From positions 124,001 through 188,000 of IMG/VR virus record IMGVR_UViG_3300020179_000005: a DNA stretch of 64,000 bases; one strand, given 5' to 3'. The notes below the pieces were generated by a model. It was not told where the DNA came from and did no database searches. It saw only the letters and a list, made by a program, of their open reading frames with translations. The position numbers were made by a program, and so were the translations under genes. Every line of letters begins with the position of its first letter. Positions within the stretch are counted from its first letter, which is position 1. Shown one piece after another: positions 23,017-44,598 of this stretch.

Positions 23017-23132
23017 TAAATATTCTTTAGCCGACTGATATAAGACTAGTATATTTAACTACATTACTAGTCTTTTTTTTTATGACTAGGAATATGGTTT
23101 CCTAGTCAAGGGTCTTAGGAGGGCCCAAAACA

Positions 23133-23672: not shown

Positions 23673-23795
23673 CCAGCTAATTGGTTGGTAATAAGGGATC
23701 TATATATGGCTAGTAAATTTAACTATATTACTAGTCTTTTATTTTTTATGGTTAGCCATCCGGCTACCAAAATCAACAATGGGGAGGAAAAACCC

Positions 23796-24227: not shown

Positions 24228-24372
24228 CAAGGCAAGCAAGAAAAGAAGAAGGGGTCCAAAAGGGCCCCTTTTTCTTTATGACTAGTACTTAGACTTCAAG
24301 TATCAGTCAGGGTTGAAGTGTCGTTTCCCAAATCAAAAATGACGCAATGTACATCCATACAAGGAGGATGAC

Positions 24373-24690
24373 ATGAACAAGCAAATCAAGTGCGGTGCCT
24401 GCGGGCATACGCACCCGACCGTGGCAGAGGTATTCAGCTGCCACAACACACTGGGGGTTTTCAAACTCCAGGAAGCGGATGAACTGGCGAAAGACATGCC
24501 AAAGCGCCAGTTCGTCAAGACTCCAAAGGCACAGGAGCCCAAGACCTACCAGGTCCATGTGTTCCCGACCAAGGAGGGCGCCGAGGCATTCATTGCCAAA
24601 ACGCCAAAGACCCGACTCGGAACGACGAAAGTCAAGTACGTGGACGGACAGCCCGAGAAGACCTATCAGGTCATCGAGAGCTTGAAGTAA
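24373..24690 (+). CDS. Hypothetical protein with N-terminal CxxCxxxH..C zinc site
   Basis: AAGGAGG RBS; KCGACGHTH…SC. Confidence 0.65.
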   Translation: MNKQIKCGACGHTHPTVAEVFSCHNTLGVFKLQEADELAKDMPKRQFVKTPKAQEPKTYQVHVFPTKEGAEAFIAKTPKTRLGTTKVKYVDGQPEKTYQVIESLK

Positions 24691-24838
24691 TAACCTAGCA
24701 GGGGAAAGAAGTCACCCCTGCAAACCAAGAGTCGGGTTCAGCCGACAGTAGAAGGGGCTTCGGCCCCTTTTACTTTATGACTAGTACTTAGGTCTCTATT
24801 CTGAGGCCGCTAGTAGCTCAAGAGAAAGGAAACTCATC

Positions 24839-27481
24839 ATGAGCGCAATCAACCAAGCGGTGAAGGGCGAAATCCCGATCATCGCATTCCTGTCAGGAAA
24901 GTGGCGAATCCTGACCAACAATCCCAGGGCACACGAAAAGTCTGCTCTGGAACTGTTCAGGGATACCAAAGAGCCAATCCAAGTCCAGACACGGACTCCA
25001 CAAGGTAGGACAATTTCCAACTACCTGATGGAAATCCACAATGGAACCTGGATCTACCCTGCGTTGAGCAAGTTGAACAAAAGAGGATTCACATTCCGAC
25101 TTGGTTCAATCTCAATCAGTGACCTAAAGCATGAAATCAAGTTGAAGAGGACCAATATCGACCTGTTGGTTGATGGATCCACTTTTGCTTGGGCAAATGC
25201 GACCTATGCATTCTTCCTTTACATCGATGGAATGGATCGTGAGATCTTCAGCCTCGAGGCAATGGACATGATTGCACTGGATGCAAAGAAGACACCAAAG
25301 CGACTGCAAGAAGTTGGTCGTTCATGCCAGATGTACAAGTCTGGTAAGTTCGACGAACTGAGCTGCTTGATGTTGGTGGACCCCAGCAATGAAATCCCAG
25401 AAGCTGAACATGATCACGGACCGGGTAACTGGCCTGCTGCTCGTGAAGAAGTCACCCTGGAGATGAGCCCTGATGGCAATAATTGCAATCCGTACGACGG
25501 ACCAATCATTGTCAGTCAGAGCTTCTTGCGGGAGATGTGCTACAAGATGGAAGAAGGTCATGAAAAGCGCCGTATGATTGCAATGATCATGGGCAACAAG
25601 ATTGACCGGTTCATCTTCCGACTGAGGACTCCGTACGGACTCGTAAAGGGTTTGGGTTTGTGCAGGCCTGACAGGGTGATGTCTCATGATGTCATCTTCC
25701 ACAGCAGTGCAATCAAGCCGGAGTTCCATTCGGATGGCAACAACTATCTGGCAACGGCGTTCATTCACGAGAACATCCACACGGCGATGTGGGACATGCA
25801 GAGCACGTTCCACAATCACGATTGGTTGTTCACCGAAGAGCGTTTCGTTCAGGACTCAGAGTCATTGGTGGATGACATCACCAAATCGTTCGCAGACAAC
25901 AAAGTGCCGGACTTCATCTTGCACCAAGTAAAGTTTGCTCATGACGAAGCTGGTGTGCACCACGAAGAACCTGTAGTGGCTGGTTGGAAGACCGCTGTTG
26001 TCAGGTGGCTTGAGGCAGGGAATGATCTGTCTGCTTCTGCTTGCTTTAACAGGCTGGCGATTGGTTCTGTAGAAATGCAGATGCAATCAGCACGAGACAA
26101 CAACCGTTGGTGGCTGCCAATGAGCAATGCATTCATGGCAACCGTCAACACCTATGCTGCCTTGGAGCACATGGCGATGATGGACCTTCCGGAAGAGAAG
26201 CGCAATTGTGTCTTCTATCTGGAGAATGTTGGTGTGGTAATTCCCACCGACAGGTTCGTTGATACCGCTGTGTTGCATGACACATGGGATCAAGACGGTG
26301 ATCAAGCCAAGTTCATCTGGATCAAAATCTGGTGCAGCCAGTATGGTCGAGAGAAACTGGAGAAGCTGTATTCGGACTCGGTACTGCCAGTCAACATGAT
26401 TGTGCCAGAGACACCGGAGGAAGCCATCGACGTCTGCGTAGTGATTCGTTCACCAAACGGACCAGGTGGGTACAGCATTGAGTGGTTTGATGCAGAGACC
26501 ATGCCATGGCACAGGCGTAATGACGAGCGGGTTCCGGTCATCGACTTGAACACTGCTCCATTCGGCATGTCGACTTTGCTGGAGACCTCTGAGCGAGGAG
26601 AGATTCCTCATTCAGTGGAGTACACCAGCAGGATGATCACACGAGACAACGTCAAACGGATGATCAGGGCACAGTTGGTAAATCCCAACGTAGGTACGTA
26701 TGCCAACTTGATCATGGCTTACTCTGCAATCATGGGAGTGAGCTATCCTGAGTGGCTGCCGGCAAACAGCAACGATGTGATCGACACCAATCAACAGGAG
26801 GCGGACATCGATTCCTTCCTCTACCTGAAGTTTGGAATGTTGCACATGCAAAAGTTGATCGTGAATGAAATCATTCGCGAACAGGTGCCTGTTGACAAGT
26901 TCGTGTTCAAGACACGTCTGTCGATTGGCATGGACGAAACAGATCAGGACATGCTTGAGGACATTCTGGTGGATGGCAAATTCACCCGTATGGACAATGT
27001 GAACAAGCACACCCTGGATCAAGTCAAGAAGATGATCGTTGAAGTTTCATTCGGTCGTCGTCTGGAATCTGAAACTCGTCAGTTGGTCATGGACAAATTG
27101 TCGATAGTCAAGCCGGAACACGTCGAATGGGCAAGTGGACTCTTCAAGGAGTTCGATGTGCGCCTCAAGCGTGCAGATGCAAAGTACCACTCCTCAGTGG
27201 CCAAGGCCGGTAAACTCGGGTTCAACAGCAAGTATCTCAAGATGTTTGCCGAAACCGAGCGCAGCAGGGAAATTGGCGATATTCAATCGGACCTGTACAA
27301 CAGGATCAATTCACACACAGCACCAGAAAAGTGGGCTGTACTGCTGTACCGGTACATCGTGGATCCGAGCCTGAACTCTGGCAAGTACGGTCTCAGTGAC
27401 CGGATCATCTTCCAGAATGGCCAGGAAGGACAACCCACGGTCATGGACCTGTTGATCCAAGGTTTGGCTGACCTCAAGTAA
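24839..27481 (+). CDS. Single-chain two-barrel RNA polymerase, YonO/cellular-RdRP-like (paralogue 1)
   Basis: Motifs YDGPIIVS, FRLRTPYGLVKG, WDQDGD (DxDGD), IRSPNG, NVGTYAN, DVID. Confidence 0.75.
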   Translation: MSAINQAVKGEIPIIAFLSGKWRILTNNPRAHEKSALELFRDTKEPIQVQTRTPQGRTISNYLMEIHNGTWIYPALSKLNKRGFTFRLGSISISDLKHEIKLKRTNIDLLVDGSTFAWANATYAFFLYIDGMDREIFSLEAMDMIALDAKKTPKRLQEVGRSCQMYKSGKFDELSCLMLVDPSNEIPEAEHDHGPGNWPAAREEVTLEMSPDGNNCNPYDGPIIVSQSFLREMCYKMEEGHEKRRMIAMIMGNKIDRFIFRLRTPYGLVKGLGLCRPDRVMSHDVIFHSSAIKPEFHSDGNNYLATAFIHENIHTAMWDMQSTFHNHDWLFTEERFVQDSESLVDDITKSFADNKVPDFILHQVKFAHDEAGVHHEEPVVAGWKTAVVRWLEAGNDLSASACFNRLAIGSVEMQMQSARDNNRWWLPMSNAFMATVNTYAALEHMAMMDLPEEKRNCVFYLENVGVVIPTDRFVDTAVLHDTWDQDGDQAKFIWIKIWCSQYGREKLEKLYSDSVLPVNMIVPETPEEAIDVCVVIRSPNGPGGYSIEWFDAETMPWHRRNDERVPVIDLNTAPFGMSTLLETSERGEIPHSVEYTSRMITRDNVKRMIRAQLVNPNVGTYANLIMAYSAIMGVSYPEWLPANSNDVIDTNQQEADIDSFLYLKFGMLHMQKLIVNEIIREQVPVDKFVFKTRLSIGMDETDQDMLEDILVDGKFTRMDNVNKHTLDQVKKMIVEVSFGRRLESETRQLVMDKLSIVKPEHVEWASGLFKEFDVRLKRADAKYHSSVAKAGKLGFNSKYLKMFAETERSREIGDIQSDLYNRINSHTAPEKWAVLLYRYIVDPSLNSGKYGLSDRIIFQNGQEGQPTVMDLLIQGLADLK

Positions 27482-27739
27482 TTAATCCTTTATTGATTGT
27501 GAATACCTATGGGTATTCTAAATAGGTCTCTCTGGCTGGCTAGGCTCTAGGTTGCTTGGCTGGCTTGGGTTGTTGCGTGTTGACTCTTCTTACGGGTCTA
27601 ACGCGCAAAATAGGGGTCTTTCCCCGTTTGGCGTTGCTGAACGGGTTTGACTCTGAAAATAGGGGCTCATTCCCGAGCCTCTTCAGGCGGTCACTGCCTG
27701 CGTAAGAAAGTGGCAAAGCGGTCAAGGAGCCGCAGCAAT

Positions 27740-28252
27740 ATGAAGCAGATACTGAAGGCGCTCTACGCCAACAATGATTGGCAGGAGCGAGTGAACACCG
27801 AGACGGGCAAGCGATTCTGGCAGGTGCTAGTTGGGCCTGTTGGCTTTGATGCCGTTTCGGCGGAAGACCGTCAGGTCAACGCGTACAACTGGGCAATCAA
27901 CGAAGATGACCAGTTGACCGTGGAAGTGGACGGTGCCAAGCACTCAGTGAACCTGAAGTCCTATGTGGACGAAGTGGTTCGCAGTGCGACTGGTGGAATC
28001 AACCCGAAGGGTGTGTTGCGCGTCTTGTGCGACGACATCGTGCTGGGGAAGGCCACCGAGTTGACCTACAAGGATGGCAGCGTCCACCCGCAAATCACGG
28101 TGTACCCCGTGAACTTCGTGGTTGAGACCTACCAGCGGAGCAGGCCAGCAGCGGTGAAGATGGACAACGCAGCGTTCGCAGCGCTGAAGAGTCGGATGTC
28201 GCAGCCGACGCGGCCAGTGGTGGTCGCTGAGAGCAGTGACGCACCGTTCTGA
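27740..28252 (+). CDS. Hypothetical protein, possibly SSB-like (acidic C-terminal SSDAPF)
   Basis: AAGGAG RBS; beta-rich body; GC-rich codons; followed by a GC hairpin. Confidence 0.55.
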   Translation: MKQILKALYANNDWQERVNTETGKRFWQVLVGPVGFDAVSAEDRQVNAYNWAINEDDQLTVEVDGAKHSVNLKSYVDEVVRSATGGINPKGVLRVLCDDIVLGKATELTYKDGSVHPQITVYPVNFVVETYQRSRPAAVKMDNAAFAALKSRMSQPTRPVVVAESSDAPF

Positions 28253-28468
28253 CCGAACGGCGGAATGTGTTGGTGGGGGGGCTTCGGCCCCCCTGCCAAT
28301 AAAAAATTGGTCTAGGTATATAGGTTCTTGCTATCCCTCCTTGGGGACACCCAGTCCGGCGGTGCTATGCACTTCTCACCGTCGGGCTGGGTCGTCTTTT
28401 CGTGTGGGTGCTTGAATGGTAATACAAAAAAAATAGGGGTAACATCCAAGTCAACAGTGGAGGGCATC

Positions 28469-28675
28469 ATGCCTAAGCAATCAGTGAATCCAGTAATTCC
28501 GTTTGAAGTAATGATTCCCAAGCGGGGAGATAGGTCTCAGGTGTTGGCGGAAATCGTCAGCATCGTCGAGAACGCACCTTCTTCCAAGTGGGACAAGTAC
28601 CAAAGTGCAGAACAAGAGTTCCATCTCTTCAATGTGATGGCAGCTTCCTCAATCCCGGAGGACAATAACGTATAA
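28469..28675 (+). CDS. Hypothetical protein
   Basis: GGAGG RBS before ATG 28469. Confidence 0.55.
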   Translation: MPKQSVNPVIPFEVMIPKRGDRSQVLAEIVSIVENAPSSKWDKYQSAEQEFHLFNVMAASSIPEDNNV

Positions 28676-28679
28676 GATG

Positions 28680-29150
28680 TTTCCCTGTACAACCGTAATC
28701 ACATGCAGGGTTATGCCATCGGGCGAAGAACCGATGTTAGCGGAGAATGGTTGGATTGTCCGGGTTTATTCTGTGTCGGCCCTTAAGTGGAAGTACGTAC
28801 AGGATAGACGAAACTTATTGTGAACTGGGCTGGCCCGTCCCAAAGGATGTCGGAGTCTGTTGATATCTTCGGAGCAACAGACAGGGCGCTATTAATGGGA
28901 GATTGATGTCCCGTGGATACATCAATGGTGTAATTGCAGCATCAGACAGCTCTTGCTGACATACCAAGTAGACAAAGTGCAGTAGTATGTCACAGAATTA
29001 AAAGTGGGGAAGGCGTTCGCAACTCCCCATGGTTATGGGACTGGCTTAAATGCCGGGCCATTGACGGGTTTCGGTTCAACCGAGTAATGTCCCATCTGGC
29101 TGACCCACCTACGGCGAACCTAGTGGGTGGGGCGCAAGCCCTGCCCACTC
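28680..29150 (+). ncRNA. Candidate large structured non-coding RNA
   Basis: No convincing ORF; dense hairpins (CATCGG/CCGATG, TCTGTTG/CAACAGA, ATTGATGT/ACATCAAT, TGACATAC/GTATGTCA, TGGGGA/TCCCCA, GTGGGTGGGGC-GCAA-GCCCTGCCCAC). Confidence 0.6.
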
Positions 29151-29226
29151 GATAATAATATATAAAAAAATTTTTTATTAGCTTATAATTCTAAAAATTT
29201 ACACTAGAAAAATAGGGGGGTGTTTC

Positions 29227-30286
29227 ATGACGCAAGAATGGACAGATTTGGTGCCCAAGTGCACCATACACAATGTTCCGATGAGAGTAAAACAACTGAC
29301 ACTCACTGAAGAACGCGAAGTTCGTGATTGTGACCTGATCATTGACGACACGCGCAAACACTGGGTTTGTGATTCGTGCCGCATTGTTTGGGTTTCCATC
29401 ATTGAGAACAACGAGATGAATGTACTTGGTATTCCAAGGTCGCACTAAAAATAGGGGTAATTATGAAATATGTGTTATTGCCAGTAATGTGGAAAATAAA
29501 GAATGCTTGTTGGCGCATAGCCGTCAAATTGAGCAAACTTGAATACACGATACTTGATCGTATCGATGCAATTGATCCCCACTATGCCGATAGGCAGTGG
29601 GCTAAGAAAATATTCAACAAAAACAAAGGGGTAAAGTAATGTCATCATGGAAGTTAACCAAAGCAGTAATGCGTGCTCAACTAATCTGGATGGTCATCGC
29701 ATTTTCGGTAATGTTCATCGTCGGTTTGTTTGTGACCAAGGACAAGGTTCCAAGCAAAAGGACCAAGGATGGTTTCAAGACCGAAGAGATGCAGTCCGTC
29801 TACGATCACTATCTGAATAAGGAGATGAAGTATGGCAAGTCCTGAAAACACCAAATGGTGGAAGGAATCCGAACGCTTGAAGGAAAAAAACAAGCGTCGT
29901 TCTGCCCGCCGCAAAGCAAATCCCGGTTTCCATAATCCCAGAGCCAAAAAGAAAGAGAGTGAATAATGTACATATTCCACGAAAACCAATACGACACCGA
30001 TAGCAGCAGTATCTACGGGTTCTTTGTCTACCGCAAAGACGGAAAGTCCATGCCCAAGGGTATGATCACTTCGTTCAATGCGATGTGGTACAAAGCCTTG
30101 GATAGGTTCCCTTCTTTCAGCCAGATCGAGTTCGCCGTTCAATCACCAACTGGTGACTCGTCAGACCACTTCGACTACACGATGCCCTGTGCGAATTTCG
30201 AACAGGCAAAAGCCATTGTGGACAACTATCGTGCAGGCTTGTACGAAATGCTGGGTGAAATTCGTAAAGAGGAGTTGTACTCATGA
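29227..30286 (+). CDS. Run of small hypothetical genes (29227..29448, 29639..29845, 29966..30286 and short ORFs between)
   Basis: Overlapping start/stop codons with RBSs. Confidence 0.55.
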
Positions 30287-30631
30287 AACCGATCACTAAA
30301 ATTGGTTTGATCGTCACCACGATTGCATTCCTAATTTCTGGTGCAGCATACAAGTTCCGGCGAAAGCCGGGCTTGTAATGCTGTTACCGGGAATATTCAC
30401 GGCAATCATTCTAAATCTTATTGTCATAGTCTTGGTCGGATTGGCCAAGGTTAATGACGATAGAAAAAAATAACACTAGCCTTCCTGTTTTAAAAATTCC
30501 TAGGAAAATAGGGGTCATATTGAAGGGAGGTGATGCGTGTTTGATTGGTTGTTCGATCTAATCACTGAACTAATAGATGCAATATTCGGAACATATGAAG
30601 AATTCTAACAACAAAAGAAAGAGGTAATGTC

Positions 30632-30832
30632 ATGCGTAAGTTAGGTAAACTGTTGGGCAAGACAACCGCCCAAACAAAGAACCTCGCCAAGTCCACCAAG
30701 AGTGGTGGTAAGGCTGCGATCAGCAAGACAAAGTCAACATTGGTAACGGCCAAAGACGACTTCGTTGCTGGTTACAAGGAACAGGCTGGTGGAGAAAGTT
30801 CCTCACCAATCGTTCCTGAATCAGGCGATTGA
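30632..30832 (+). CDS. Small Lys-rich hypothetical protein
   Basis: GAGGT RBS. Confidence 0.55.
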   Translation: MRKLGKLLGKTTAQTKNLAKSTKSGGKAAISKTKSTLVTAKDDFVAGYKEQAGGESSSPIVPESGD

Positions 30833-30925
30833 AATACAAAATAGGGGATCGTTCAGCAGTGAACTTTCCTTCAGCAATACATCATATCATATCAAACAAT
30901 AAAACACAAAGGAAAAAAACATATT

Positions 30926-31963
30926 ATGTCCACACTAAGCAACAAGTTCGGTATCAAGAGCGACACATTCGCTGTTGTCACCGAGAACCCCGATGCGCTC
31001 AAGTCCCAGAGTTCAACCGTCAAGTTGATCAAGGACAAGCGCGTCAAGATCAAGGGTTCCATCAACGGCAATGCCATTGACACCTATGCGACTCTGGAGT
31101 CCGCATTCTGGACTCGTCTGACGGTTCGTGACCACGAAGTCCGCCGCCAGAACGCAGAGCCCCGTATCAGCCAAGTCTTTGGTGGCGTGTTCAAGCCAGT
31201 CAAGTTGAAGGTTGAAGTCGAACTCGGCGGTCAGGTAATGACGCTGAGTGAGTTGATCGAGACCCTCATTCTTGAGAGCGCCAAGGGCAAGAGCCTTGAT
31301 GACGTGCGTAAGATCCTCAACGACACCAACCTGATCAAGGGCCTCAGCGACGGTATGCCACTGATGTTCCAACAGATGGGTGCCAGCCAGAACGGTTTCG
31401 CCCACGCGGTGGAAATCTTCAAGGCGGCAGGTGGTATTGACGATCTGGCAACGCTGCACAAGAATCCGCGTTTCCACACCTGCTATGACATGAAAGCCAA
31501 TCAGGGTCTGGAAGTGGTTGCCTTCGAGTTGGGTTCAGCCGACCGCAAGCAATCCACCACTGGTCAGGGTTTCATTGACATCGTTGACGCGGTGTTCAGC
31601 AACCTCGTGCGTGTCATTGAACACAAGACCGCAGCGAGCATCCTGTCCAAGCAGATTCAGGAGAAGGCAGCCGAGATGTCCCAAGGGGATGTCAAACTGC
31701 ACGAAGCCAAGATCAAGAACGAACTTGACATGAGCCGTCAGTACCCAGTGATCTGGTCTGGTGCTTCTCGTCAGGTTGATGTGCAAGCCAATGGTGAGAA
31801 AGTTACCAGAGACAAGTACAACGCAACCAACGCACCGTGTGGTCGTTGGACGGTTGTGACTGCCAATGGTAACGTGGATCTGGATGTCTGGTCTAACTCG
31901 ACCAACAAGCCAGCCAACGCACCTGTCGCAGTACAGGTTGACACCACAGTTGCACCGTTCTAA
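30926..31963 (+). CDS. Hypothetical protein, probably highly expressed, C-terminal VAPF
   Basis: 345 aa, strong C/G third-position bias, AAAGGA RBS. Confidence 0.75.
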   Translation: MSTLSNKFGIKSDTFAVVTENPDALKSQSSTVKLIKDKRVKIKGSINGNAIDTYATLESAFWTRLTVRDHEVRRQNAEPRISQVFGGVFKPVKLKVEVELGGQVMTLSELIETLILESAKGKSLDDVRKILNDTNLIKGLSDGMPLMFQQMGASQNGFAHAVEIFKAAGGIDDLATLHKNPRFHTCYDMKANQGLEVVAFELGSADRKQSTTGQGFIDIVDAVFSNLVRVIEHKTAASILSKQIQEKAAEMSQGDVKLHEAKIKNELDMSRQYPVIWSGASRQVDVQANGEKVTRDKYNATNAPCGRWTVVTANGNVDLDVWSNSTNKPANAPVAVQVDTTVAPF

Positions 31964-32066
31964 GTAGAAGGTGTTGTTCCCGCCAGTTAGTTGCCATCAG
32001 AGCAAAAAGCCCATCTGGCGGGGACACCACCAATACTTATAATAATAAAAAATAATACTAGCCCTA

Positions 32067-32366
32067 ATGAAAGGTAGGCTATTTATGTACCCGATTGCCT
32101 TGGCGGTGTTCTTGGGTTTTGCTGTGGCGTTTGCCACGGATGCAATTCTCAATTATCTTCCGTTCCTGCAGAAGGTTCCATACCTAGGAAAGCCTGAAGT
32201 TCTGTTTCCAGTGTTGACCGTCTTGACGGTCTGGGCAGCAGATGTCAGCATTCTGGGAGCCTATGGATTTGGTGGAGATCAATGGTTGAATGTCGTTGGT
32301 TCGGCATTTGCCATCGTGGTCGCTACTAAAACCGTAGATGAAATCACTGACGCTTTGACGCGTTAG
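32067..32366 (+). CDS. Small 3-TM membrane protein (holin-like architecture)
   Basis: Three hydrophobic segments; function not established. Confidence 0.55.
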   Translation: MKGRLFMYPIALAVFLGFAVAFATDAILNYLPFLQKVPYLGKPEVLFPVLTVLTVWAADVSILGAYGFGGDQWLNVVGSAFAIVVATKTVDEITDALTR

Positions 32367-32451
32367 AGGTAGTAGTGGGTGGTAGTGTCCTTGCACTATC
32401 ACCCACAAACCCCTATAAAAAAAATTTTACTAATTCAAAAAGGAGCAAACA

Positions 32452-32682
32452 ATGACAAAACGCCCACCACTAACACCATGTATCATTTGTGAAAAAGCAG
32501 TAATGCACCTATGGGAAAACAACGCCACCAACCTCAATGGTGGTTGTGACATCAGGATCAGTGCTCATTATGGTAGTGAGTTTGATACCTCTAAATTTGC
32601 CGGCATTGTGTGTGACGAATGTGTAGACAACTTGGTTCAATCCAAACGACTCAGGTTTATCGGTTACAATCACGATCTATAG
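32452..32682 (+). CDS. Small zinc-binding protein
   Basis: CIIC and CDEC; AAGGAG RBS. Confidence 0.65.
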   Translation: MTKRPPLTPCIICEKAVMHLWENNATNLNGGCDIRISAHYGSEFDTSKFAGIVCDECVDNLVQSKRLRFIGYNHDL

Positions 32683-32945
32683 AACGAATGTGTACTGTCT
32701 ACTCTATAGTCTATATAAGGCTATAGGGTAGCAGTAACAAAAAATATTTCTAGTCTTCTGGGTACCGAAAAAATTCGGTCCTTTACGGTAATAAATATTT
32801 TTATTTTTATTAGTCCTCTGGTCACCGAATTTTTCGGGGGGCCCCAGAAAAAAGTTCTTTTAGGTGTTGCATCTAAAAAAGAATATATGCTATAGTATAT
32901 TCAGCAAGCAATACCAAAATTATTCAAACTTACAAGGAGCAATGT

Positions 32946-33176
32946 ATGCCAAAGCAACATCAATCCAAAGCCATCAAAGAAGTCTTTCGGGAGCTGAGAA
33001 GACTTGGCTTTGTAGTAGAACAGAAGAAATCAGGCGCATACCGGATTGTCCCCCCTTCAACAATTCCGGGCCCGATATATACAACTCACGGCACAGAATC
33101 AGCGTTACACCCAATACGCCGTGACTTTAAAAAATATTATAACATAACTCTTCAATCTACTCTTAAAGTCAAATAA
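32946..33176 (+). CDS. HicA-like small protein
   Basis: Size and pattern ELRRLGFVVEQKKSGAYRI resemble the HicA dsRBD fold; the canonical GSH His is absent. Confidence 0.45.
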   Translation: MPKQHQSKAIKEVFRELRRLGFVVEQKKSGAYRIVPPSTIPGPIYTTHGTESALHPIRRDFKKYYNITLQSTLKVK

Positions 33177-33670
33177 CAAGGAAAAGTTTGTTAGAGCTAC
33201 GAGGTTAAATATGCCCCTATATTGTGACCTCGTAGCTCGATTTAATTAAAAGGACTTTTTATTATTAAACTTAAATAAATATCAGTATTAGAATAAAATG
33301 TTATCAAAAGTAAAATTAAAGGCTCTCTCGGGCCTGAACCCATTATACTTTTATTATATTTTGTATTATCAACATACTATATCAATATCAAAGGCGGTAG
33401 TGTCATGGCTAAATTGCCCAACAAATGGAATGATCAGGATCGCAAAGACTTCAAAAATGGAGTACGCCTACGTGCTGTTACCATACAGGATAAAAAAAAG
33501 ACGTGGAACAAAAAGGCTTGTAGAATAAAAATACCCTTGGATCACAACTTCGACTAACTTCCAGTGGGTTGCAGTGGTGAACAGTGGGGATATCTTTATA
33601 TTCCTACAAGCATATACTCTATCCCTATTAGCATATACGTAAAAATTATAAAAATTTTTGCGGGCGGCCT

Positions 33671-33743
33671 GCCCTGGTAGCTCAGTGGATAGAGCAACGG
33701 ACTTCTAATCCGCAGGTCGTAGGTTCGACTCCTACTCAGGGCG
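33671..33743 (+). tRNA. tRNA-Arg(TCT)
   Basis: GCCCTGG acceptor, anticodon loop CTTCTAA, GGTTCGACTCC. Confidence 0.95.
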
Positions 33744-33932
33744 CAAAATGGAAACTAAAAGGATTGGCTGTTGCGTCAGCCAATTCGGTATAGTTTCTGG
33801 GCACATAACAAAAATGTGTGGATGAAGACCAACCTTGTAGGATTCCCTCCATTTATCCTAACATGTTCCCGATTCCTACTCCCCCTGTGAATCGCCAGAA
33901 CTATATCCAACTTAAGAAAGGTTCATTGCCAT

Positions 33933-34391
33933 ATGTCAACGCAGCTCATGGATTCTAAACGCTTACCAATGACAGATGACCCTAAGATAGTTTCTATTCT
34001 TAGAGTTCATCATGCATTATGGAATAGGGAATCTTTTATTGAGCGGGGCGGCCAGAAGTACACGCCTTTTGTACCAGCTCATGATGGTTACATATCCGTC
34101 GTACTGCCAAACGAACAGGGTTATAACTTATTATGGATTACTCAGAATCTGAATAAATCCACTTCAGGATCTTTAGAGATTAAAAAAGCCCGTTCGTTGG
34201 GTAACGACAAAAGAATTACATGGATCGTAGACAATTCAAACTCTAAGTTTTTGTACCTTGGTTCGGTCCATACTTGCAATTATTTTGACGGCCAAGAAGA
34301 TATAATCATTGAGCGTTATTACCAAGATGAACCCACTCAAGTCCTATGGACTAACATGCCTTTTTACTTGCCTGTCAAGTCTAAATATTAG
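33933..34391 (+). CDS. Hypothetical protein
   Basis: 152-aa ORF. Confidence 0.65.
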   Translation: MSTQLMDSKRLPMTDDPKIVSILRVHHALWNRESFIERGGQKYTPFVPAHDGYISVVLPNEQGYNLLWITQNLNKSTSGSLEIKKARSLGNDKRITWIVDNSNSKFLYLGSVHTCNYFDGQEDIIIERYYQDEPTQVLWTNMPFYLPVKSKY

Positions 34392-34557
34392 AAATTGTTA
34401 ATGGGTCAAATTTATATAGGTTTGTTCTCAACCATACTATATATATATTAATATGTTGTAATTCAAATAAAATAAATTTCAACAAAACTTGCATATTTTA
34501 CCCTTCTACACTATAATATTTATACACCTTTATACACCTTAAACGGAGAGTACCATA

Positions 34558-34764
34558 ATGGCTAAGCCATCAAAAACACCACAAATTGAACAATTCATCA
34601 ACACACACGTCAACAATACTTTTTCAACAAAAGAGATGTGCGAACAAATCGGAGTGAGCCTTCCAACTTTGTTGAATTATATTAGAGCCAATCAAAACAG
34701 ATTTCAGCTTGTATCCTACGGTACTTACACCATAGTTCAAGCTTCAACATCTGCTAATTCTTAA
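34558..34764 (+). CDS. Small helix-turn-helix protein
   Basis: FSTKEMCEQIGVSLPTLLNYIR. Confidence 0.7.
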   Translation: MAKPSKTPQIEQFINTHVNNTFSTKEMCEQIGVSLPTLLNYIRANQNRFQLVSYGTYTIVQASTSANS

Positions 34765-34955
34765 CTTTATTATTAGATAAGGTTACTATACAAGGATATA
34801 ATGCCCGTTCCCAGCGGGCAGGGAAAAGATCCCTAACATAACAGAGCAATACTGTGAAGTCGGAGATAGGCAACCTGCCATCTGTGACGGGCATTTCGTT
34901 TTTGTCCGCACATCTTCGGGTTCGCAACCTGCGTTATACTAATGACAATTGTTAA

Positions 34956-35639
34956 TTGATTGTCAGACTAGACGATAAGGAGCGAAAACGCATGCTAGTA
35001 CAAAACGCGATAAAATATTTTGTAGTAACCTTACTTACCTTTGTTAACTTTACTGGACTGTTTGTAGTCAATCAGTTACATGAAGAAACAAAGCAAGTTA
35101 AGGAGCCCCCTAGTACCCTTGTGGTACAAACACATCACACCGTACAACAACATAACAATCTTTATTCATTAAATGAAACTAAAGATATTGGTTCTAATAT
35201 AAATAGCGTTCAGCATTACGGACTAACATTTAAACATGGTGATATTTCTTGGTTACCATACCTTGCTGCTCAAGCAGGTTGGCCAGAACACACATGGAAT
35301 AAGTTAGGCCAGATAATCTTACGCGAGTCAGGCGGTTGTCCCAACCGTCGTGGCGGTGATGTCGTAAATTCTAATTGTGTCATAACCAGAGTTTCTGAAT
35401 GGAACCACCGTTCAGACACAGGCTTGTTACAGATCAACGGAGTCAATTACAACACTAAGCGCAACAAGTGGGCAGCAGTATGCAATAGAATGTCTGTCTG
35501 CACACAAGAGCCTTTGTTGGATCCATTGACCAATCTTAAAGCCGGTAAACTTCTTTATGATATAGCAGGATGGTCACCATGGAATCCCTGCACATGGGAT
35601 ATTTCCAAGTGTCCAAAAAAGGTATCGACATCTGACTAA
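34956..35639 (+). CDS. Membrane-anchored lytic transglycosylase (SLT/lysozyme-like); start probably ATG 34992
   Basis: RESGG catalytic Glu, DTGLLQIN, NLKAGKLLY..GWSPW; N-terminal TM segment. Confidence 0.8.
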   Translation: MIVRLDDKERKRMLVQNAIKYFVVTLLTFVNFTGLFVVNQLHEETKQVKEPPSTLVVQTHHTVQQHNNLYSLNETKDIGSNINSVQHYGLTFKHGDISWLPYLAAQAGWPEHTWNKLGQIILRESGGCPNRRGGDVVNSNCVITRVSEWNHRSDTGLLQINGVNYNTKRNKWAAVCNRMSVCTQEPLLDPLTNLKAGKLLYDIAGWSPWNPCTWDISKCPKKVSTSD

Positions 35640-35712
35640 AATAGGGGATCTTATTCCCTTTATTTTAATTCAAAATATGGCATAAACATCTAACTAAAGA
35701 AAGGCTAGTTGT

Positions 35713-36126
35713 ATGTTCCTTACTATGATGATCGTTCTTGGTTTATCATCATTTATCGTAGAAATGATGCTCGCAGTGAATATTCCGTGGTGGAGACAAA
35801 ATGCTCATCGGTTGAAATGGTTTAACATGATCATTTCAATCACTTTGTCATCAGTACTTGGCTTTCTATTTGGAGCCGCAGGTCTTGTCGTTATGGGCGC
35901 TGCTTTGTTTGGTACTGTTTTATCTATTCCGGGTTATGCATTCTTGCACTGGAATTATGATTCAGAGCAAGCAGCCCGCTATGGTGGCAACATGCTTTCC
36001 CATATTCGCGGAAAATGGGTTCAAGCATTCAAAGATCTTGCTAAAGTAATTTATACAGTAATAAAAGTAATTACATTTCCCGTCTGGGGATTGAGATGGG
36101 TAGCAAACAAAATAAACAATAGATAG
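35713..36126 (+). CDS. Membrane protein
   Basis: Multiple hydrophobic segments. Confidence 0.65.
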   Translation: MFLTMMIVLGLSSFIVEMMLAVNIPWWRQNAHRLKWFNMIISITLSSVLGFLFGAAGLVVMGAALFGTVLSIPGYAFLHWNYDSEQAARYGGNMLSHIRGKWVQAFKDLAKVIYTVIKVITFPVWGLRWVANKINNR

Positions 36127-36173
36127 TATATTTATAGCCATATCAACGCAACTATGGAGAAAATGGAGATTAT

Positions 36174-38759
36174 ATGACATTGTCCTATCGACCAAGAGTT
36201 CGGCTCAACGCAGAAATATACGGTCCTTTGCGTAGCATGAACGATTACCAGTTCGGCTTCTATGACACAGGCTTTCTGCGTCAAGCCGTACAGGCACTTT
36301 CTGAGCAGCATTCTACGGAAAAACCTGTGTCGTTTAGAATGGCCACTCTACCAATACCTCAGACACCATCCGAATTACGGATAGCAGAAGCCATCGTTCG
36401 CCATCCACAGATTTCTTATGCAATCGTGGACAAGGACAAAATGGCCTTCGTTATCATCGAGGGGTGTCCAGGTTGGCTAGAGGCATTCAAGCGTCTTGGT
36501 TACGAAGTTTACGCCGGAGACAAGACTGCGAAACGACTCAAGACTTTTCACCGTCCTGCACTGTTGAACGCAACGTTTGCCAAGGACGAGTTGAACGTAA
36601 TGATCGTAGATCCCACTCAATATTCAGAATACAATTTCAATGATCCCGAAATGTTAGCTTCTTTGTCACAAGACTATCCCGGTGTAGATTTCAAGGACCC
36701 AAAAGTTCTTGCTCGCTTGTTGGACGGTGGTTTTGTCGTATCTTCAAAGTTGATACAGCGTGCTGTAGCCAACTTGCCGGTATACGAACCCTCAAAGACC
36801 ACCGACACCAAAGAGTATTATTACGATTGGCGGATTCGCAAGAAGCTGGTACGCAATCTCTTGAAGCAGAAAGTATACAATGCCCGCATCGTTTTCGATA
36901 AGGGTTTCCTCAAGGGTAATTGCATAGTTTCTGACAACCTACCTGAGGGAGTTGATATCATCACTTCCCAGGATAACATCAAGTCAGAAATCAAGTATGA
37001 AAACGGATTCAAATTCATTGCAGAGCCGCAAGGTTCCCACGAACGAGTAATCACCGACGACCAAACGCTCATCAACCTTCCAAATCTGTTTCGCCAGTCA
37101 GACATGGAGTTCTGGCTAGACGAAGAGTACAAGAAAATGTTTGATGATGCGGTCAACTGTCGTCTGCTTACGAACTGGCGTGAAATCTACAAACGACAGT
37201 TCCGTAACCTCGCAGACGCAGAAGACGAAGAGGCCAACTCTAGAATGTCGTACGTTGGTTACCGATGGGTATCCTCTGGAATGAAGATAACCGATTCACC
37301 TTGGCTCTTTGAAACATTGGCAACCAGCCACGCAAAACCATACCAGTCTCGGGTTCCCATTCCTTGTTCTGTCTACGAACAGGTGATACCAGAGTCGTTG
37401 GCACATATGGCTGGCTATGAGCTGAGCGTACAGGTGGAACAGGGTCAAATCATTCGTATCAACGAGATAGGCGTTCACGTCGTCAACGACGCTGATTGGC
37501 TCGAGATGTACGAGTCGCACGGCGGCCACGACGAGGACGATTATTTCAAGCTGTTCTACCGCACCATGGAAGGCGGGAAATTTGACGGACAAAAAGTCGT
37601 CATCGTATGCCGTTCACCAAACGGTATCGGTGAGTACTCGATCTTTCGGTATGTAGAGGGCCAATGGTCACCCACTTGGCACAAAGCAGATGGCACTCCG
37701 ATCAAGTTCCCCACCGTTTCCGGGCGCGGATGGCCAAAACGACTCAGTGAATGTATTCGTGATAAAGAAGTACGTTATACTGGATTTCCATCCGAACACG
37801 TTAAGAAGTCCAAGAAAACCGGCTTGTATACACAAGACGACGTCATTTCAGATATCAAAGTCGCCATGACCGGCGGCAATGTCGGAGGTTACGTCAATGC
37901 CGCAATGGTTCATTCTTTGATCATTCACAAACATCGTCCAGTCCAACTTTGTTCTATGGAAAAGGCAATTGACAAGTGCATCAACCCCGACTTTGCAGAG
38001 GATGTACTTGCGATTGACGAAGAAGCCAAGAAGATCGTCAGAGAGATCATCGATTCCGCACAACCAATAGACACGAATGTTTGGCTGAAACGAGGTTTCA
38101 AACGTTATCTGAAGGACGGAGAAGAGATCGTACTGCACGACGGTAAGATAACACAAATGAATCTACTTTGTTCACAAAAGTATTCGGAGTATTGCCAGAA
38201 AGTACGCAATTGGGCGCAGCTAAACGCTAAGCCACCGCAGATCGTACATGATCTCGCCCAACGCCTCTACTTTCAGGCACTTTCCACGGTAAAGGACTTT
38301 CGTAGCAAGATCTATCAGGTCAATATTTCTGAAACCACGCAATCAACTGGCAACATAGTCAGAGGATCATGGGAGTCAATGTACACTGAGATTGTTAATA
38401 TCATTAATTCTTTCCAGCGTATAGAAGACAAGCATGATTTTGTGTTGTCCATGTATTCGGTTTCTTTGAACGTTCCCACATCTGCAGGTAAGGTTACGGA
38501 TCAGATCGTAATGAATCGATTCGTTTATCCTTATTTGGAGTCTGCATTACAGTTTTACGGTATTGCAAGCACCGTCTTTTTCACCCCGAAAGCGGACGGC
38601 GATGTGGACGTAAACACGTTCAAGAGCGACAAATGGCAGTACGACAAGCACATCTATCACGACCCGATGTCTTTCCAAGAAGCACATCGTCAGGACACGG
38701 AAGTTGTGTTCACACCCACGATCAAGTTCACCAGAACTTCCAGCGTATCAAGATATTAA
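36174..38759 (+). CDS. Single-chain two-barrel RNA polymerase-like protein (paralogue 2), variant catalytic loop GGHDEDD
   Basis: LLDGGFVVS, NARIVFDKGFLKG, HGGHDEDDY, VCRSPNG, NVGGYVN, KAID, collinear with 24839..27481. Confidence 0.7.
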   Translation: MTLSYRPRVRLNAEIYGPLRSMNDYQFGFYDTGFLRQAVQALSEQHSTEKPVSFRMATLPIPQTPSELRIAEAIVRHPQISYAIVDKDKMAFVIIEGCPGWLEAFKRLGYEVYAGDKTAKRLKTFHRPALLNATFAKDELNVMIVDPTQYSEYNFNDPEMLASLSQDYPGVDFKDPKVLARLLDGGFVVSSKLIQRAVANLPVYEPSKTTDTKEYYYDWRIRKKLVRNLLKQKVYNARIVFDKGFLKGNCIVSDNLPEGVDIITSQDNIKSEIKYENGFKFIAEPQGSHERVITDDQTLINLPNLFRQSDMEFWLDEEYKKMFDDAVNCRLLTNWREIYKRQFRNLADAEDEEANSRMSYVGYRWVSSGMKITDSPWLFETLATSHAKPYQSRVPIPCSVYEQVIPESLAHMAGYELSVQVEQGQIIRINEIGVHVVNDADWLEMYESHGGHDEDDYFKLFYRTMEGGKFDGQKVVIVCRSPNGIGEYSIFRYVEGQWSPTWHKADGTPIKFPTVSGRGWPKRLSECIRDKEVRYTGFPSEHVKKSKKTGLYTQDDVISDIKVAMTGGNVGGYVNAAMVHSLIIHKHRPVQLCSMEKAIDKCINPDFAEDVLAIDEEAKKIVREIIDSAQPIDTNVWLKRGFKRYLKDGEEIVLHDGKITQMNLLCSQKYSEYCQKVRNWAQLNAKPPQIVHDLAQRLYFQALSTVKDFRSKIYQVNISETTQSTGNIVRGSWESMYTEIVNIINSFQRIEDKHDFVLSMYSVSLNVPTSAGKVTDQIVMNRFVYPYLESALQFYGIASTVFFTPKADGDVDVNTFKSDKWQYDKHIYHDPMSFQEAHRQDTEVVFTPTIKFTRTSSVSRY

Positions 38760-38791
38760 TAACAACAATATATGAAAGGTAAGTATATTAT

Positions 38792-39718
38792 ATGAATAAA
38801 GATACAGAGATTCAAATGCAGCAAGATGAAATTGGTTCTGATTTGGAGATCAACGTTCCTTTGTGGAGAAATTTCGTGAAGGACGTTCGCAAGATGACTT
38901 ATCCCGAAGATCCTCACACTGTTCGGGAATTGGTCAAGGCCTATTATCGACTGCAGGATGCACGCATTGCGATTGCAGCCCAGTCCAGAGAATTGGCCAA
39001 ACGCGAAAAGCCGAATCAAATGAACGAACACATGGCTATCAACATGAAGTACATGGAGCAGTCGTTGGTTGATCCATTCAAGCACTTCAGTGGCAAGTAC
39101 TTGGCCGGACGATGGGCACTTTCCCAGTACGGCATAGGTCCGGTAATCACCGCTGGATTGTTGTCCAACATTGACATTTCCAAGGCCCATACTGCTGGTA
39201 GCATTTGGCGTTTCGCTGGAATGGATCCCACGGTTGTTTGGCAGAAGGGCGAAAAGCGCCCTTATAACGCAGATCTAAAGACTCTCGTTTGGAAAATTGG
39301 ACAGAGTTTCATGAAGTTCTCTGGTCGCGACCAGTGCTTTTATGGCAAGTTGTATCTGCAGGACAAAGCACGTCGTGTACAGTTGAACGAATCTGGAACA
39401 TATTCCGAAAGAGCCAAGTCAATCTTGGAGCAGAAACAATGGAAGAAGAACAATCCTACCCGTCGCAGACTGCAGGAAGGTTATTTACCTGACGGTCAGA
39501 TAGATGGTCAGGCACGTCGCTTTGCTGCCAAGATCTTTTTGTCTCATTTCCATACGGTGTGGTACGAAGATTACCACACTAATCTTCAGGGTACTCCCGT
39601 ACGCGCACCCCGACCTTATGTCATTCAGCATGGCGGTCATTCTCATATGATCGAAGTGCCGAATTATCATCAAGCAGTGGACGGTGTTTCTTCCGGATAC
39701 ATCATTTTGGACAAATAA
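38792..39718 (+). CDS. tasA: Nop-domain/IS110-related RNA-binding protein without nuclease domain (TasA-like)
   Basis: YYRLQDARIA coiled coil, YGIGPVITAGLL, SIWRFAGMDP, YNADLKTLVW, ARRFAAKIFLSHF; only ~45 aa precede the coil, so no RuvC/HNH; TIGR-like array 0.6 kb downstream. Confidence 0.8.
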   Translation: MNKDTEIQMQQDEIGSDLEINVPLWRNFVKDVRKMTYPEDPHTVRELVKAYYRLQDARIAIAAQSRELAKREKPNQMNEHMAINMKYMEQSLVDPFKHFSGKYLAGRWALSQYGIGPVITAGLLSNIDISKAHTAGSIWRFAGMDPTVVWQKGEKRPYNADLKTLVWKIGQSFMKFSGRDQCFYGKLYLQDKARRVQLNESGTYSERAKSILEQKQWKKNNPTRRRLQEGYLPDGQIDGQARRFAAKIFLSHFHTVWYEDYHTNLQGTPVRAPRPYVIQHGGHSHMIEVPNYHQAVDGVSSGYIILDK

Positions 39719-39757
39719 ATAACTTCTTTGTTTTGACCCAAAATACCGGAGGATAAT

Positions 39758-40671: not shown

Positions 40672-40746
40672 TTTCAAATAAAAGGATCGGAACGAGTGGA
40701 CCCATACCACCCATTCCGACCCTACCAACCACAAAGGAGTCACAAA

Positions 40747-44577: not shown

Positions 44578-44598
44578 CATATTGGTTAGGGAGGTGTT

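What the first reader, a model, noticed from the sequence alone, without database searches (positions are those of the whole stretch)
27607..35647. Second motif class (AAAATAGGGG) takes over right after polymerase 1
Seen: the first motif stops at 24784. Eight copies of AAAATAGGGG begin 126 bp after the polymerase 1 stop, and the last precedes the membrane gene + polymerase 2 + tasA run. Six copies are too far from a start codon to be an RBS. Inference: a middle-class promoter, perhaps read by polymerase 1, driving polymerase 2 and the TIGR locus.
Basis: partly seen in the sequence, partly recalled or inferred. Interest (0 to 1): 0.62.

Follow-up and report, generated by a model that had tools for sequence, protein, structure and literature searches.

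The report
Middle-gene promoter motif of a giant phage
A ten-base signal, AAAATAGGGG, sits in front of eight gene groups right after a phage-encoded RNA polymerase gene in an uncultured 210-kb lake phage and nowhere else in its genome. Related phages keep it, or a lineage-specific variant, at the same places, so it is most likely the start signal read by that polymerase.

Summary
AAAATAGGGG occurs 8 times, all on the + strand at window 27607-35647, and nowhere else in the 209,701-bp phage genome on either strand (0.5 copies expected).

The first copy lies 126 bp after the stop of ORF 24839-27481 ("polymerase 1"). The last lies 65 nt before a membrane gene followed by "polymerase 2". Six copies are 22-123 nt from a start codon that has its own ribosome-binding site.

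Both polymerases have no sequence-level family match. Both fold as two-barrel single-chain RNA polymerases, closest to plant RDR2, QDE-1 and the Thermus phage P74-26/P23-45 polymerases.

Comparative evidence is the main support:
- In five phages with polymerase 1 only 35-67% identical, the 10-mer is invariant at 39 sites while the flanks are unconserved.
- Other lineages carry AAAAGGGGGG, GAATAAGTSGG or AAAAGAAGGG at the same syntenic sites.
- Every site in a genome carries the same variant, and each variant forms one clade on the polymerase 1 tree.

Best reading, confidence about 0.6: a middle-class promoter read by polymerase 1, with transcription starting at the G-run. Nothing shows that it drives the TIGR locus. 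No third motif class was found.

The parts
24774..24784 (+). Last of 11 copies of the first motif class (TTTATGACTAG), 55 nt before the polymerase 1 start codon and just after a GC hairpin plus T-run
24839..27481 (+). Polymerase 1 (880 aa): a two-barrel single-chain RNA polymerase with an invariant D484-x-D486-G-D488 motif. It is the proposed reader of the motif.
   Evidence: No Pfam, PHROG or PDB sequence hit. AF2 model pLDDT 86, pTM 0.85. Foldseek top hit RDR2, E 9e-8. VIA-align: RDR2 Z 11.8, QDE-1 Z 8.5, P74-26 gp62 Z 8.1, P23-45 gp96 Z 6.7. Invariant residues.
27592..27606 (+). Conserved ACGGGTCT-type box directly upstream of motif copy 1. A second box lies at 27641-27655 before copy 2. 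The box is present before the polymerase-proximal tandem copies in all three lineage variants.
27607..27616 (+). Motif copy 1, 126 bp after the polymerase 1 stop. Its G-run pairs with a CCCC 5 nt downstream.
27656..27665 (+). Motif copy 2, in tandem 49 bp after copy 1 and 74 nt before ATG 27740 (170-aa ORF with its own AAGGAG). It is followed by a 7-bp hairpin that starts in the G-run.
28430..28439 (+). Motif copy 3, 29 nt before ATG 28469 (68-aa ORF with its own GGAGGG)
29209..29218 (+). Motif copy 4, 8 nt before ATG 29227. Here the G-run could also serve as the ribosome-binding site.
29448..29457 (+). Motif copy 5. It overlaps the stop codon of the preceding ORF and lies 5 nt before ATG 29463.
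30505..30514 (+). Motif copy 6, 22 nt before a conserved micro-ORF (30537-30608, peptide starting FDWLFDLI) that follows a copy of the motif in every lineage
30838..30847 (+). Motif copy 7, 78 nt before the conserved 345-aa gene (30926-31963). It is followed by a long hairpin that begins at the G-run and is kept, with different sequences, at the orthologous site in six relatives.
35638..35647 (+). Motif copy 8. It overlaps the stop of ORF 34956-35639 and lies 65 nt before the membrane gene. Its G-run is the 5' arm of a hairpin followed by a T-run (35643-35660).
35713..36126 (+). Small membrane protein gene (137 aa, 2-3 hydrophobic segments), the first gene after copy 8
36174..38759 (+). Polymerase 2 (861 aa): a paralogue of polymerase 1 with the same two-barrel fold. 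Its invariant acidic motif is D453-x-D455-D456, not DxDGD.

Best explanation
AAAATAGGGG is the core of a middle-class promoter of an uncultured 210-kb freshwater phage.

Proposed sequence of events:
1. An earlier transcription machinery, not identified, reads the TTTATGACTAG class and so expresses polymerase 1, a single-chain two-barrel RNA polymerase.
2. Polymerase 1 recognises the 10-bp element directly. It needs no -35/-10 architecture.
3. Transcription starts at or just before the G-run, giving transcripts that often begin with a G-run/C-run hairpin.
4. These promoters drive about 20 small genes, a conserved 345-aa gene, a tRNA, the membrane gene and polymerase 2.

What is shown: the motif's exclusivity, strand and position; its conservation and its concerted lineage-specific switching; and the polymerase fold with an intact catalytic motif.

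For: 1. Exclusivity. All 8 copies lie in one 8-kb stretch on one strand, and there are none in the other 201 kb.

2. Position. Every copy is intergenic or overlaps a stop codon and lies upstream of a + strand gene at a variable distance of 5-123 nt. No sigma-70-like hexamer pair coincides with any copy.

3. Conservation. In five phages whose polymerase 1 is 35-67% identical, 39 sites share all ten positions (information content 2.0 bits each), while the flanks stay below 0.45 bits.

4. Synteny. Four positions recur across lineages: two tandem copies soon after polymerase 1, one before the FDWLFDL micro-ORF, one before the 345-aa gene, and one before the membrane gene plus polymerase 2.

5. Concerted switching.
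- L001 and L010 have 7 of 7 sites as AAAAGGGGGG.
- L013-L022 use GAATAAGTSGG.
- G004 and G007 use AAAAGAAGGG directly after their divergent polymerase-1-like gene.
- Each variant is confined to its own polymerase 1 to polymerase 2 interval in 170-216-kb records, and the other variants occur 0-1 times there.
- On the polymerase 1 maximum-likelihood tree each variant is one well-supported clade.

6. Polymerase 1 is a two-barrel RNA polymerase by fold and has an invariant DxDGD motif. The genome has no sigma-70 region 2 match, and the early and middle ORFs give no hit to a transcription-related family.

7. Hairpins. The G-run is paired in a 5'-proximal hairpin at 30 of 39 sites, against 50% in shuffles (p 5e-4), with mean dG -6.6 against -4.0 kcal/mol. 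This fits a G-run that is transcribed.

8. Rates of change. The class-1 motif keeps TTTATGnnTAG even where polymerase 1 is only about 20% identical. The class-2 motif diverges along with polymerase 1.

9. Precedent. In Thermus phage P23-45, two two-barrel polymerases read two distinct motif classes in a cascade (PMC10770324).
Against: - No transcript 5' ends are available. All 20 runs that hold this DNA are lake DNA metagenomes.
- All genes of these phages share one phylogeny, so the match between motif variants and the polymerase 1 tree fits any phage-encoded reader equally well.
- The nearest solved structures are RNA-dependent polymerases (RDR2, QDE-1). DNA-dependent activity is assumed by analogy with the phage members of the fold.
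- In two copies the G-run sits where a ribosome-binding site would be.
- Copy 8 is followed by a hairpin plus T-run that would lie inside its own transcript.
- In L005, two ORFs lie between polymerase 1 and the first copy.
- In G010, two copies lie beyond polymerase 2.
- The GAATAAGTSGG lineage has no copy directly before polymerase 2.
Confidence: 0.6

Rival explanations
1. The motif is a promoter, but it is read by the host RNA polymerase redirected by a phage early protein. The model is T4 late promoters: a single short element, TATAAATA, read with the phage factor gp55 (recalled from memory).
For: The element is short, has no partner, and is A-rich at its 5' end. Most early ORFs have no recognisable function and could hide such a factor. 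A host-type TGnTATAAT-like promoter does seem to be used elsewhere in these phages, before the conserved non-coding element near window 34800.
Against: There is no sigma-70 region 2 match anywhere in the genome, and the early ORFs give no hit to a transcription-related family. This model places the start about 7 nt downstream of the element, so the G-run would not be transcribed, whereas the G-run is preferentially paired with downstream sequence. The phage carries two polymerase genes of its own, placed exactly at the class boundaries.
Confidence: 0.12
2. The motif is a promoter read by polymerase 2 or by another phage polymerase, not by polymerase 1. Polymerase 1 would then read the TTTATGACTAG class or have another role.
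For: The comparative data cannot separate phage-encoded readers. In G010, copies continue past polymerase 2. Polymerase 2 is an equally good two-barrel fold.
Against: The only motif near the polymerase 2 gene is class 2 itself, so it would need another route for its first expression. Polymerase 2 is strongly conserved (at least 51% identity over the best 120 homologues) while the class-2 motif varies. Polymerase 1 diverges to about 20% identity while class 1 stays TTTATGnnTAG. The copies begin directly after the polymerase 1 gene in most lineages. No third polymerase was found.
Confidence: 0.12
3. The motif acts in RNA. It would be a cleavage site for a sequence-specific endoribonuclease (the model is T4 RegB cutting at GGAG, recalled from memory) or an RNA-stability or processing signal that defines the 5' ends of cistrons within a long transcript.
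For: It is sense-strand only and intergenic. It lies next to or within ribosome-binding regions in some copies, and hairpins start at the G-run.
Against: The tandem copies lie 74-123 nt from any start codon. Copies begin only after polymerase 1, not throughout the co-oriented 60-kb gene block. No nuclease candidate was identified. A concerted switch of all ten positions is typical of promoter-polymerase pairs.
Confidence: 0.08
4. The motif is a ribosome-binding site variant or a chance repeat.
For: GGGG lies 5 and 8 nt before the ATG in copies 5 and 4.
Against: Six of eight copies are 22-123 nt from starts that have their own Shine-Dalgarno sequence. The probability of the count and clustering by chance is about 1e-7 times 1e-12. 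The 5' AAAATA half is invariant, which a ribosome-binding site does not require.
Confidence: 0.01

Closest known systems
Thermus phage P23-45 / P74-26: the tape-measure-fused virion polymerase gp96 and the non-virion polymerase gp64/gp62, with their AT-rich and GC-rich promoter classes (PMC10770324)
   Same: Two paralogous single-chain two-barrel RNA polymerases in one phage. Two unrelated motif classes occupy adjacent genome zones. The gene of one polymerase lies in the zone of the earlier class. There is fold-level similarity: P74-26 gp62 Z 8.1 to polymerase 1 and 9.1 to polymerase 2; gp96 Z 6.7 and 7.3.
   Different: There is no detectable sequence homology. Both polymerases here are free-standing genes of about 870 aa in the early/middle block, and no virion fusion was found. 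The motifs differ. The genome is 210 kb, not about 84 kb (the latter figure recalled from memory). In P23-45 the promoters rest on ONT-cappable-seq and ChIP; here there is no RNA evidence.
T7-type single-subunit polymerase promoters (recalled from memory: the consensus ends TATAGGGAGA with +1 at the first G, and tandem promoters phi1.1A/phi1.1B lie directly after gene 1)
   Same: An AT-rich stretch runs into a G-run (ATAGGG is shared). Tandem copies lie right after the polymerase gene. There is one invariant sequence per phage with lineage-specific variants. Hairpins occur at transcript 5' ends.
   Different: The polymerase fold is unrelated (two-barrel, not right-hand Pol I-like). The conserved element is 10 bp, not about 23 bp.
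crAss-like phage phi14:2 gp66 virion polymerase and Bacillus SPbeta YonO
   Same: Single-chain two-barrel polymerases of phages, related to eukaryotic RdRPs (6vr4 Z 5.1 and 4.9; PMC5467207 listed).
   Different: gp66 is a 2,180-aa virion protein. No defined 10-bp promoter of this kind is known to me for either enzyme.
phiKZ / AR9 non-virion multisubunit polymerases and their short promoters (PMC4666361, PMC5449584)
   Same: Jumbo phages that transcribe independently of host sigma factors from very short motifs at the start site, in temporal classes.
   Different: Those enzymes are split beta/beta'-like multisubunit polymerases. Here there are single chains of the RdRP-like branch.

Membership tests
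Phage-polymerase-specific promoter class (T7 / P23-45 type) | Conserved sequence on the coding strand only, in intergenic positions upstream of genes | tested here: met
   8 of 8 copies are on the + strand and are intergenic or overlap a stop codon. The same holds in all relatives.
Phage-polymerase-specific promoter class (T7 / P23-45 type) | The motif varies with the polymerase lineage, and all sites in a genome share one variant | tested here: met
   Four variants, each forming one clade on the polymerase 1 tree. Other lineages' variants occur 0-1 times per genome. This does not single out polymerase 1 among phage-encoded readers.
Phage-polymerase-specific promoter class (T7 / P23-45 type) | Primary transcript 5' ends map to the motif | not testable with these tools
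   Only DNA runs hold this sequence. Read laying was not used because contigs cannot show starts.
Phage-polymerase-specific promoter class (T7 / P23-45 type) | The cognate polymerase initiates specifically at the motif in vitro | not testable with these tools
   Needs purified polymerase 1 and polymerase 2.
Two-barrel single-chain RNA polymerases (RdRP / YonO / gp66 / gp64 branch): polymerase 1 | Two double-psi beta-barrels with an overall fold like known members | tested here: met
   AF2 pLDDT 86. RDR2 Foldseek E 9e-8. Z 11.8 to RDR2, 8.5 to QDE-1, 8.1 to gp62, aligned over 460-600 residues.
Two-barrel single-chain RNA polymerases (RdRP / YonO / gp66 / gp64 branch): polymerase 1 | Catalytic DxDGD metal-binding motif | tested here: met
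   D484, D486, G487 and D488 are invariant in 30 homologues.
Two-barrel single-chain RNA polymerases: polymerase 2 | Fold and catalytic motif | tested here: inconclusive
   The fold criterion is met: Z 11.3 to RDR2, 9.1 to gp62, 8.9 to QDE-1. The invariant acidic motif is D453-x-D455-D456, which lacks the G and shifts the third Asp. The distant polymerase-1-like protein of G004 also has DLDD.
Pfam RdRP (PF05183) | Sequence match above the family cut-off | tested here: not met
   No hit in either protein or anywhere in the genome. The resemblance is at the level of fold and language-model features only.
Shine-Dalgarno / ribosome-binding site | Purine-rich element 5-10 nt before the start codon | tested here: not met
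   Only copies 4 and 5 qualify. Six copies are 22-123 nt away from starts that have their own site.
Sigma-70-type promoter | -35 and -10 hexamers with 16-18 nt spacing | tested here: not met
   None of the 26 consensus matches in 24-41 kb coincides with a copy, and the number found equals that in shuffles.
Intrinsic terminator | GC-rich hairpin followed by a T-run | tested here: not met
   Only copy 8 has hairpin plus T-run (35643-35660). The other hairpins lack a T-run.

The most novel reading that the evidence does not exclude
These uncultured lake phages run a largely host-independent transcription cascade built from two paralogous RdRP-like single-chain polymerases. The polymerase 1 lineages and their 10-11-bp promoters (AAAATAGGGG, AAAAGGGGGG, GAATAAGTSGG, AAAAGAAGGG) would then form a natural series of mutually orthogonal polymerase-promoter pairs, with the shortest fully specified promoters known for any single-chain polymerase. 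Polymerase 2, made from the last class-2 promoter, could be the enzyme carried into the next cell to read the TTTATGnnTAG early class. That would close the loop without a third motif.
Probability: 0.25. Interest if true: 0.8.

Novelty: new variant of a known kind. Interest (0 to 1): 0.62.

Why it matters
It would define the promoter of a polymerase family that no sequence library recognises and that is absent from all 50,697 deposited phage genomes. The family is nonetheless common in lake metagenomes: 56 homologues of polymerase 1 and more than 250 of polymerase 2.

It gives a second, independent example of a cascade built from two two-barrel single-chain polymerases, after Thermus phage P23-45.

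The natural motif variants give a ready experiment on how this fold reads DNA sequence.

A 10-bp promoter with compact polymerases of about 870 aa, in several apparently exclusive variants, would also interest people who build orthogonal expression systems.

Tried and rejected
- RNA evidence. The one search for sequencing runs returned only DNA lake metagenomes. Read laying was therefore not used, since contigs cannot show transcript starts.
- A third motif class for polymerase 2. I counted k-mers in oriented intergenic regions of the 132-kb minus-strand block and of the region after polymerase 2, and in 13 relatives downstream of polymerase 2. Nothing sharp appeared. There was only a weak ATTACTAT enrichment that looks like a host -10 element, plus the TIGR array repeats.
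- A third polymerase. tblastn of both polymerases against the genome, a DxDxD scan, and an atlas look-up of a 404-aa ORF containing GDYDGD found none.
- A natural control lacking polymerase 1. G003 first seemed to lack it, but it has a divergent 947-aa polymerase-1-like frame. G001, G002, G008 and G009 show only polymerase 2. They lack both the class-1 motif and any repeated class-2-like motif. Three of these are incomplete records, so this agrees with the model but does not decide it.
- Sigma factor or transcription factor among early and middle ORFs. Pfam and PHROGs gave no hit to a transcription-related family.
- Formal covariation at the hairpin after copy 7. The MAFFT alignment supports only the G-run/C-run pairs, and the inner stems differ too much to align.
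- ATTCTAAA as a further class. It is conserved next to polymerase 1 and some class-2 sites in all lineages but is not enriched genome-wide.
- Cultured relatives. None in GenBank phages for either polymerase.

Full report
**Setting.** The window is bases 124,001-188,000 of a 209,701-bp virus record with terminal repeats, 39% G+C. About 132 kb of genes lie on the minus strand. A 60-kb plus-strand block begins near window 8,985 with recA. The DNA is found only in lake and freshwater DNA metagenomes. Neither polymerase has a homologue in 50,697 deposited phage genomes.

**Observation.** AAAATAGGGG occurs eight times, all on the + strand, starting at window 27607, 27656, 28430, 29209, 29448, 30505, 30838 and 35638.
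- Shuffles of the window give 0.1 copies.
- The whole genome has no further copy on either strand.
- By composition 0.51 copies are expected, so P(>=8) is 7.5e-8. Confinement to 8 kb and one strand adds roughly 1e-12.

- The first motif class, TTTATGACTAG, has 11 copies, all on the + strand, from 12936 to 24784. Most come directly after a GC hairpin and T-run. The last lies 55 nt before ORF 24839-27481.
- The first AAAATAGGGG lies 126 bp after that ORF's stop.
- The last lies 65 nt before a membrane-protein gene (35713-36126), which is followed by ORF 36174-38759.
- Next comes a Tas-family gene (38792-39718), which matches a solved TasH chain at E 4.7e-13.
- A 37-nt-period array follows at 40330-40680.
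- The gaps from motif to the likely start codon are 123, 74, 29, 8, 5, 22, 78 and 65 nt. The distant starts have their own Shine-Dalgarno sequences. The motif is therefore not a ribosome-binding site.

**The two "polymerases".**
- Neither ORF matches Pfam, PHROGs or any PDB sequence.
- They are distant paralogues: 27% identity over 200 residues, E 6e-11.
- Polymerase 1: with 30 homologues, AlphaFold2 gives a model with pLDDT 86 and pTM 0.85.
  - Foldseek ranks plant RDR2 first (E 9e-8), and the rest of the list is double-psi beta-barrel proteins.
  - The exhaustive aligner gives RDR2 Z 11.8, QDE-1 Z 8.5, Thermus phage P74-26 gp62 Z 8.1, P23-45 gp96 Z 6.7 and crAss-like gp66 Z 5.1.
  - D484, D486, G487 and D488 are invariant, which is the DxDGD metal site of two-barrel polymerases.
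- Polymerase 2: the model has pLDDT 82 and gives the same hit list, with Z 11.3, 9.1, 8.9 and 7.3.
  - Its invariant acidic motif is D453-x-D455-D456.
- Both are therefore RdRP-like single-chain RNA polymerases by fold. DNA-dependent activity is assumed from the phage members of this fold.

**Comparative test of the motif.** I fetched loci around homologues of polymerase 1 and of polymerase 2.

Where polymerase 1 is 35-67% identical to the window's, the same 10-mer recurs:

| Locus | Copies of AAAATAGGGG |
|---|---|
| L003 | 7 |
| L005 | 9 |
| L011 | 8 |
| L012 | 7 |
| L027 | 7 (11 in its whole contig, G012) |

- All copies are on the + strand, downstream of polymerase 1.
- Aligned on the G-run, 39 sites from five phages are invariant at all ten positions. 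No flanking position exceeds 0.45 bits.
- The sites are syntenic:
  - two tandem copies soon after polymerase 1, each preceded by an ACGGGTCT-type box;
  - one before a conserved 18-23-aa micro-ORF;
  - one before the conserved 345-aa gene;
  - one before the membrane gene and polymerase 2.

Other lineages carry a different element at these same places:

| Lineage | Class-2 element |
|---|---|
| L001 / L010 | AAAAGGGGGG, 7 of 7 sites |
| L013-L022 | GAATAAGTSGG |
| G004 / G007 | AAAAGAAGGG, directly after a polymerase-1-like gene about 20% identical |
| G003 | AAGAAAAGGG |

- Whole-record scans show that each variant is confined to its own interval in 170-216-kb genomes, while the other variants occur 0-1 times there.
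- On a maximum-likelihood tree of polymerase 1, each derived variant is one well-supported clade. AAAATAGGGG is the retained ancestral state on three deep branches.

Long stasis, followed by a concerted switch of every site in a genome, is what a single sequence-specific reader produces.

**Where transcription would start.**
- Folding the 28 nt that begin at the G-run pairs at least three of the first four Gs at 30 of 39 sites. Composition-matched shuffles give 50% (p 5e-4). Mean dG is -6.6 against -4.0 kcal/mol.
- At the site before the 345-aa gene, seven phages each form a long hairpin of different sequence that begins at the G-run.
- This fits transcripts that begin at the G-run with a protective 5' stem-loop.
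- The element ATAGGG is also the -3 to +3 core of T7-type promoters (recalled from memory). That is a resemblance only, since the enzymes are unrelated.

**Who reads it.** Arguments for polymerase 1:
- The copies start right after its gene in most lineages, as T7 promoters do after gene 1 (recalled from memory).
- The class-2 motif diverges as polymerase 1 does. The class-1 motif stays TTTATGnnTAG even where polymerase 1 is about 20% identical, and polymerase 2 stays at least 51% identical over its best 120 homologues.
- The genome has no sigma-70 region 2 match and no other recognisable transcription factor.

Limits on this assignment:
- All phage genes share one tree, so the covariation does not single out polymerase 1.
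- Records in which only polymerase 2 is detectable (G001, G002, G008, G009) lack both motif classes. That agrees with the model, but three of these records are incomplete.
No third polymerase was found.
- No third motif class was found for polymerase 2.

**Complications.**
- Copy 8 is the 5' arm of a hairpin followed by a T-run. The orthologous sites in L001 and L010 show the same feature. It may stop incoming transcription, or it may attenuate expression of polymerase 2.
- In L005, two ORFs separate polymerase 1 from the first copy.
- In G010, two copies lie beyond polymerase 2.
- The GAATAAGTSGG lineage has only four copies, and none lies directly before polymerase 2.
- Nothing ties the motif to the TIGR array except that the array lies on the same strand 4.7 kb downstream.

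**Comparison with known systems.** The closest is Thermus phage P23-45. There a virion two-barrel polymerase reads AT-rich pre-early promoters, including that of the gene for a second two-barrel polymerase, and the second polymerase reads GC-rich promoters. This was shown by cappable-seq and ChIP (PMC10770324). The logic and the fold are the same here. What differs:
- there is no sequence-detectable homology;
- both polymerases are free-standing early/middle genes;
- the motifs are different;
- the phage is an uncultured 210-kb lake phage.

I file the finding as a new variant of a known kind.

**Verdict.** The motif is very probably a transcription signal of a middle gene class (about 0.85 in total), and most probably the promoter of polymerase 1 (about 0.6). 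Direct evidence requires 5'-end mapping and in vitro transcription.

Noticed in passing
window 34800-34945 (+): A non-coding element of about 150 nt is almost invariant across lineages whose polymerases are only 33-43% identical. It has a predicted stable structure (-42 kcal/mol consensus). In relatives it is preceded by a TGnTATAAT-like host-type promoter. It matches no Rfam family even at E<=10. It is a candidate new small RNA.
   Followed up: partly
window 30537-30608 (+): A conserved micro-ORF of 18-23 codons (peptide starting FDWLFDLI, acidic and hydrophobic) is found in every lineage directly behind a class-2 motif and a strong ribosome-binding site.
   Followed up: partly
window 40330-40680 (+), with ORF 38792-39718: A TIGR-like array has about ten 37-nt units with two conserved blocks (GAATGAATCA and TTGTAACA) and two variable blocks. 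It lies next to a 308-aa protein that matches a solved TasH chain (E 4.7e-13) and PHROG 4285. The same repeat is present in relatives (L039, L044, L061), sometimes upstream of polymerase 2.
   Followed up: partly
window 12936-24784 (+): The class-1 motif TTTATGACTAG usually follows a GC hairpin plus T-run. Its ATGACTAG part is complementary to a sequence 9-11 nt downstream, so it can form a hairpin. The core TTTATGnnTAG is kept in distant relatives (G004-G007), always clustered upstream of the polymerase-1-like gene. Its reader is unknown.
   Followed up: partly
window 27592-27606 and 27641-27655 (+): An ACGGGTCT-type box lies 4-8 nt upstream of the two polymerase-proximal tandem class-2 copies. 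It is conserved in all three motif lineages, so it is more conserved than the class-2 motif itself. Its function is unknown; it could be an upstream promoter element or a stop signal for incoming transcription.
   Followed up: no
window 27515, 29188, 30408 (+), and relatives: ATTCTAAA, often in the loop of a small hairpin, lies 30-60 nt after the polymerase 1 stop and 13-25 nt upstream of some class-2 copies in every lineage. It is not enriched genome-wide (28 copies, mostly coding).
   Followed up: partly
window 24000-32000 and 36000-40000: The polymerase genes and the class-2 region have 45-51% G+C, against 39% for the genome. Relatives in which only polymerase 2 is detectable lack both motif classes, which hints that polymerase 1 with its motifs is a separable module.
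   Followed up: no
L003 88-3276 (homologues P0005, P0006): In two relatives polymerase 1 is fused to a C-terminal NADAR domain (PF08719), giving a protein of 1,041-1,062 aa.
   Followed up: no
window 33671-33744 and 44492-48149 (+): There are six tRNA genes (Arg-TCT, Leu-TAA, Asn, Lys, Val, Met). In L011 and L012 a class-2 copy lies directly after the tRNA-Arg homologue.
   Followed up: no
genome minus-strand block (outside the window), e.g. genome 2805, 85831, 104137: ATTACTAT, often preceded by TATAAT-like sequence, recurs upstream of minus-strand (probably late) genes. The enrichment is weak. It may be a host-type -10 element.
   Followed up: partly
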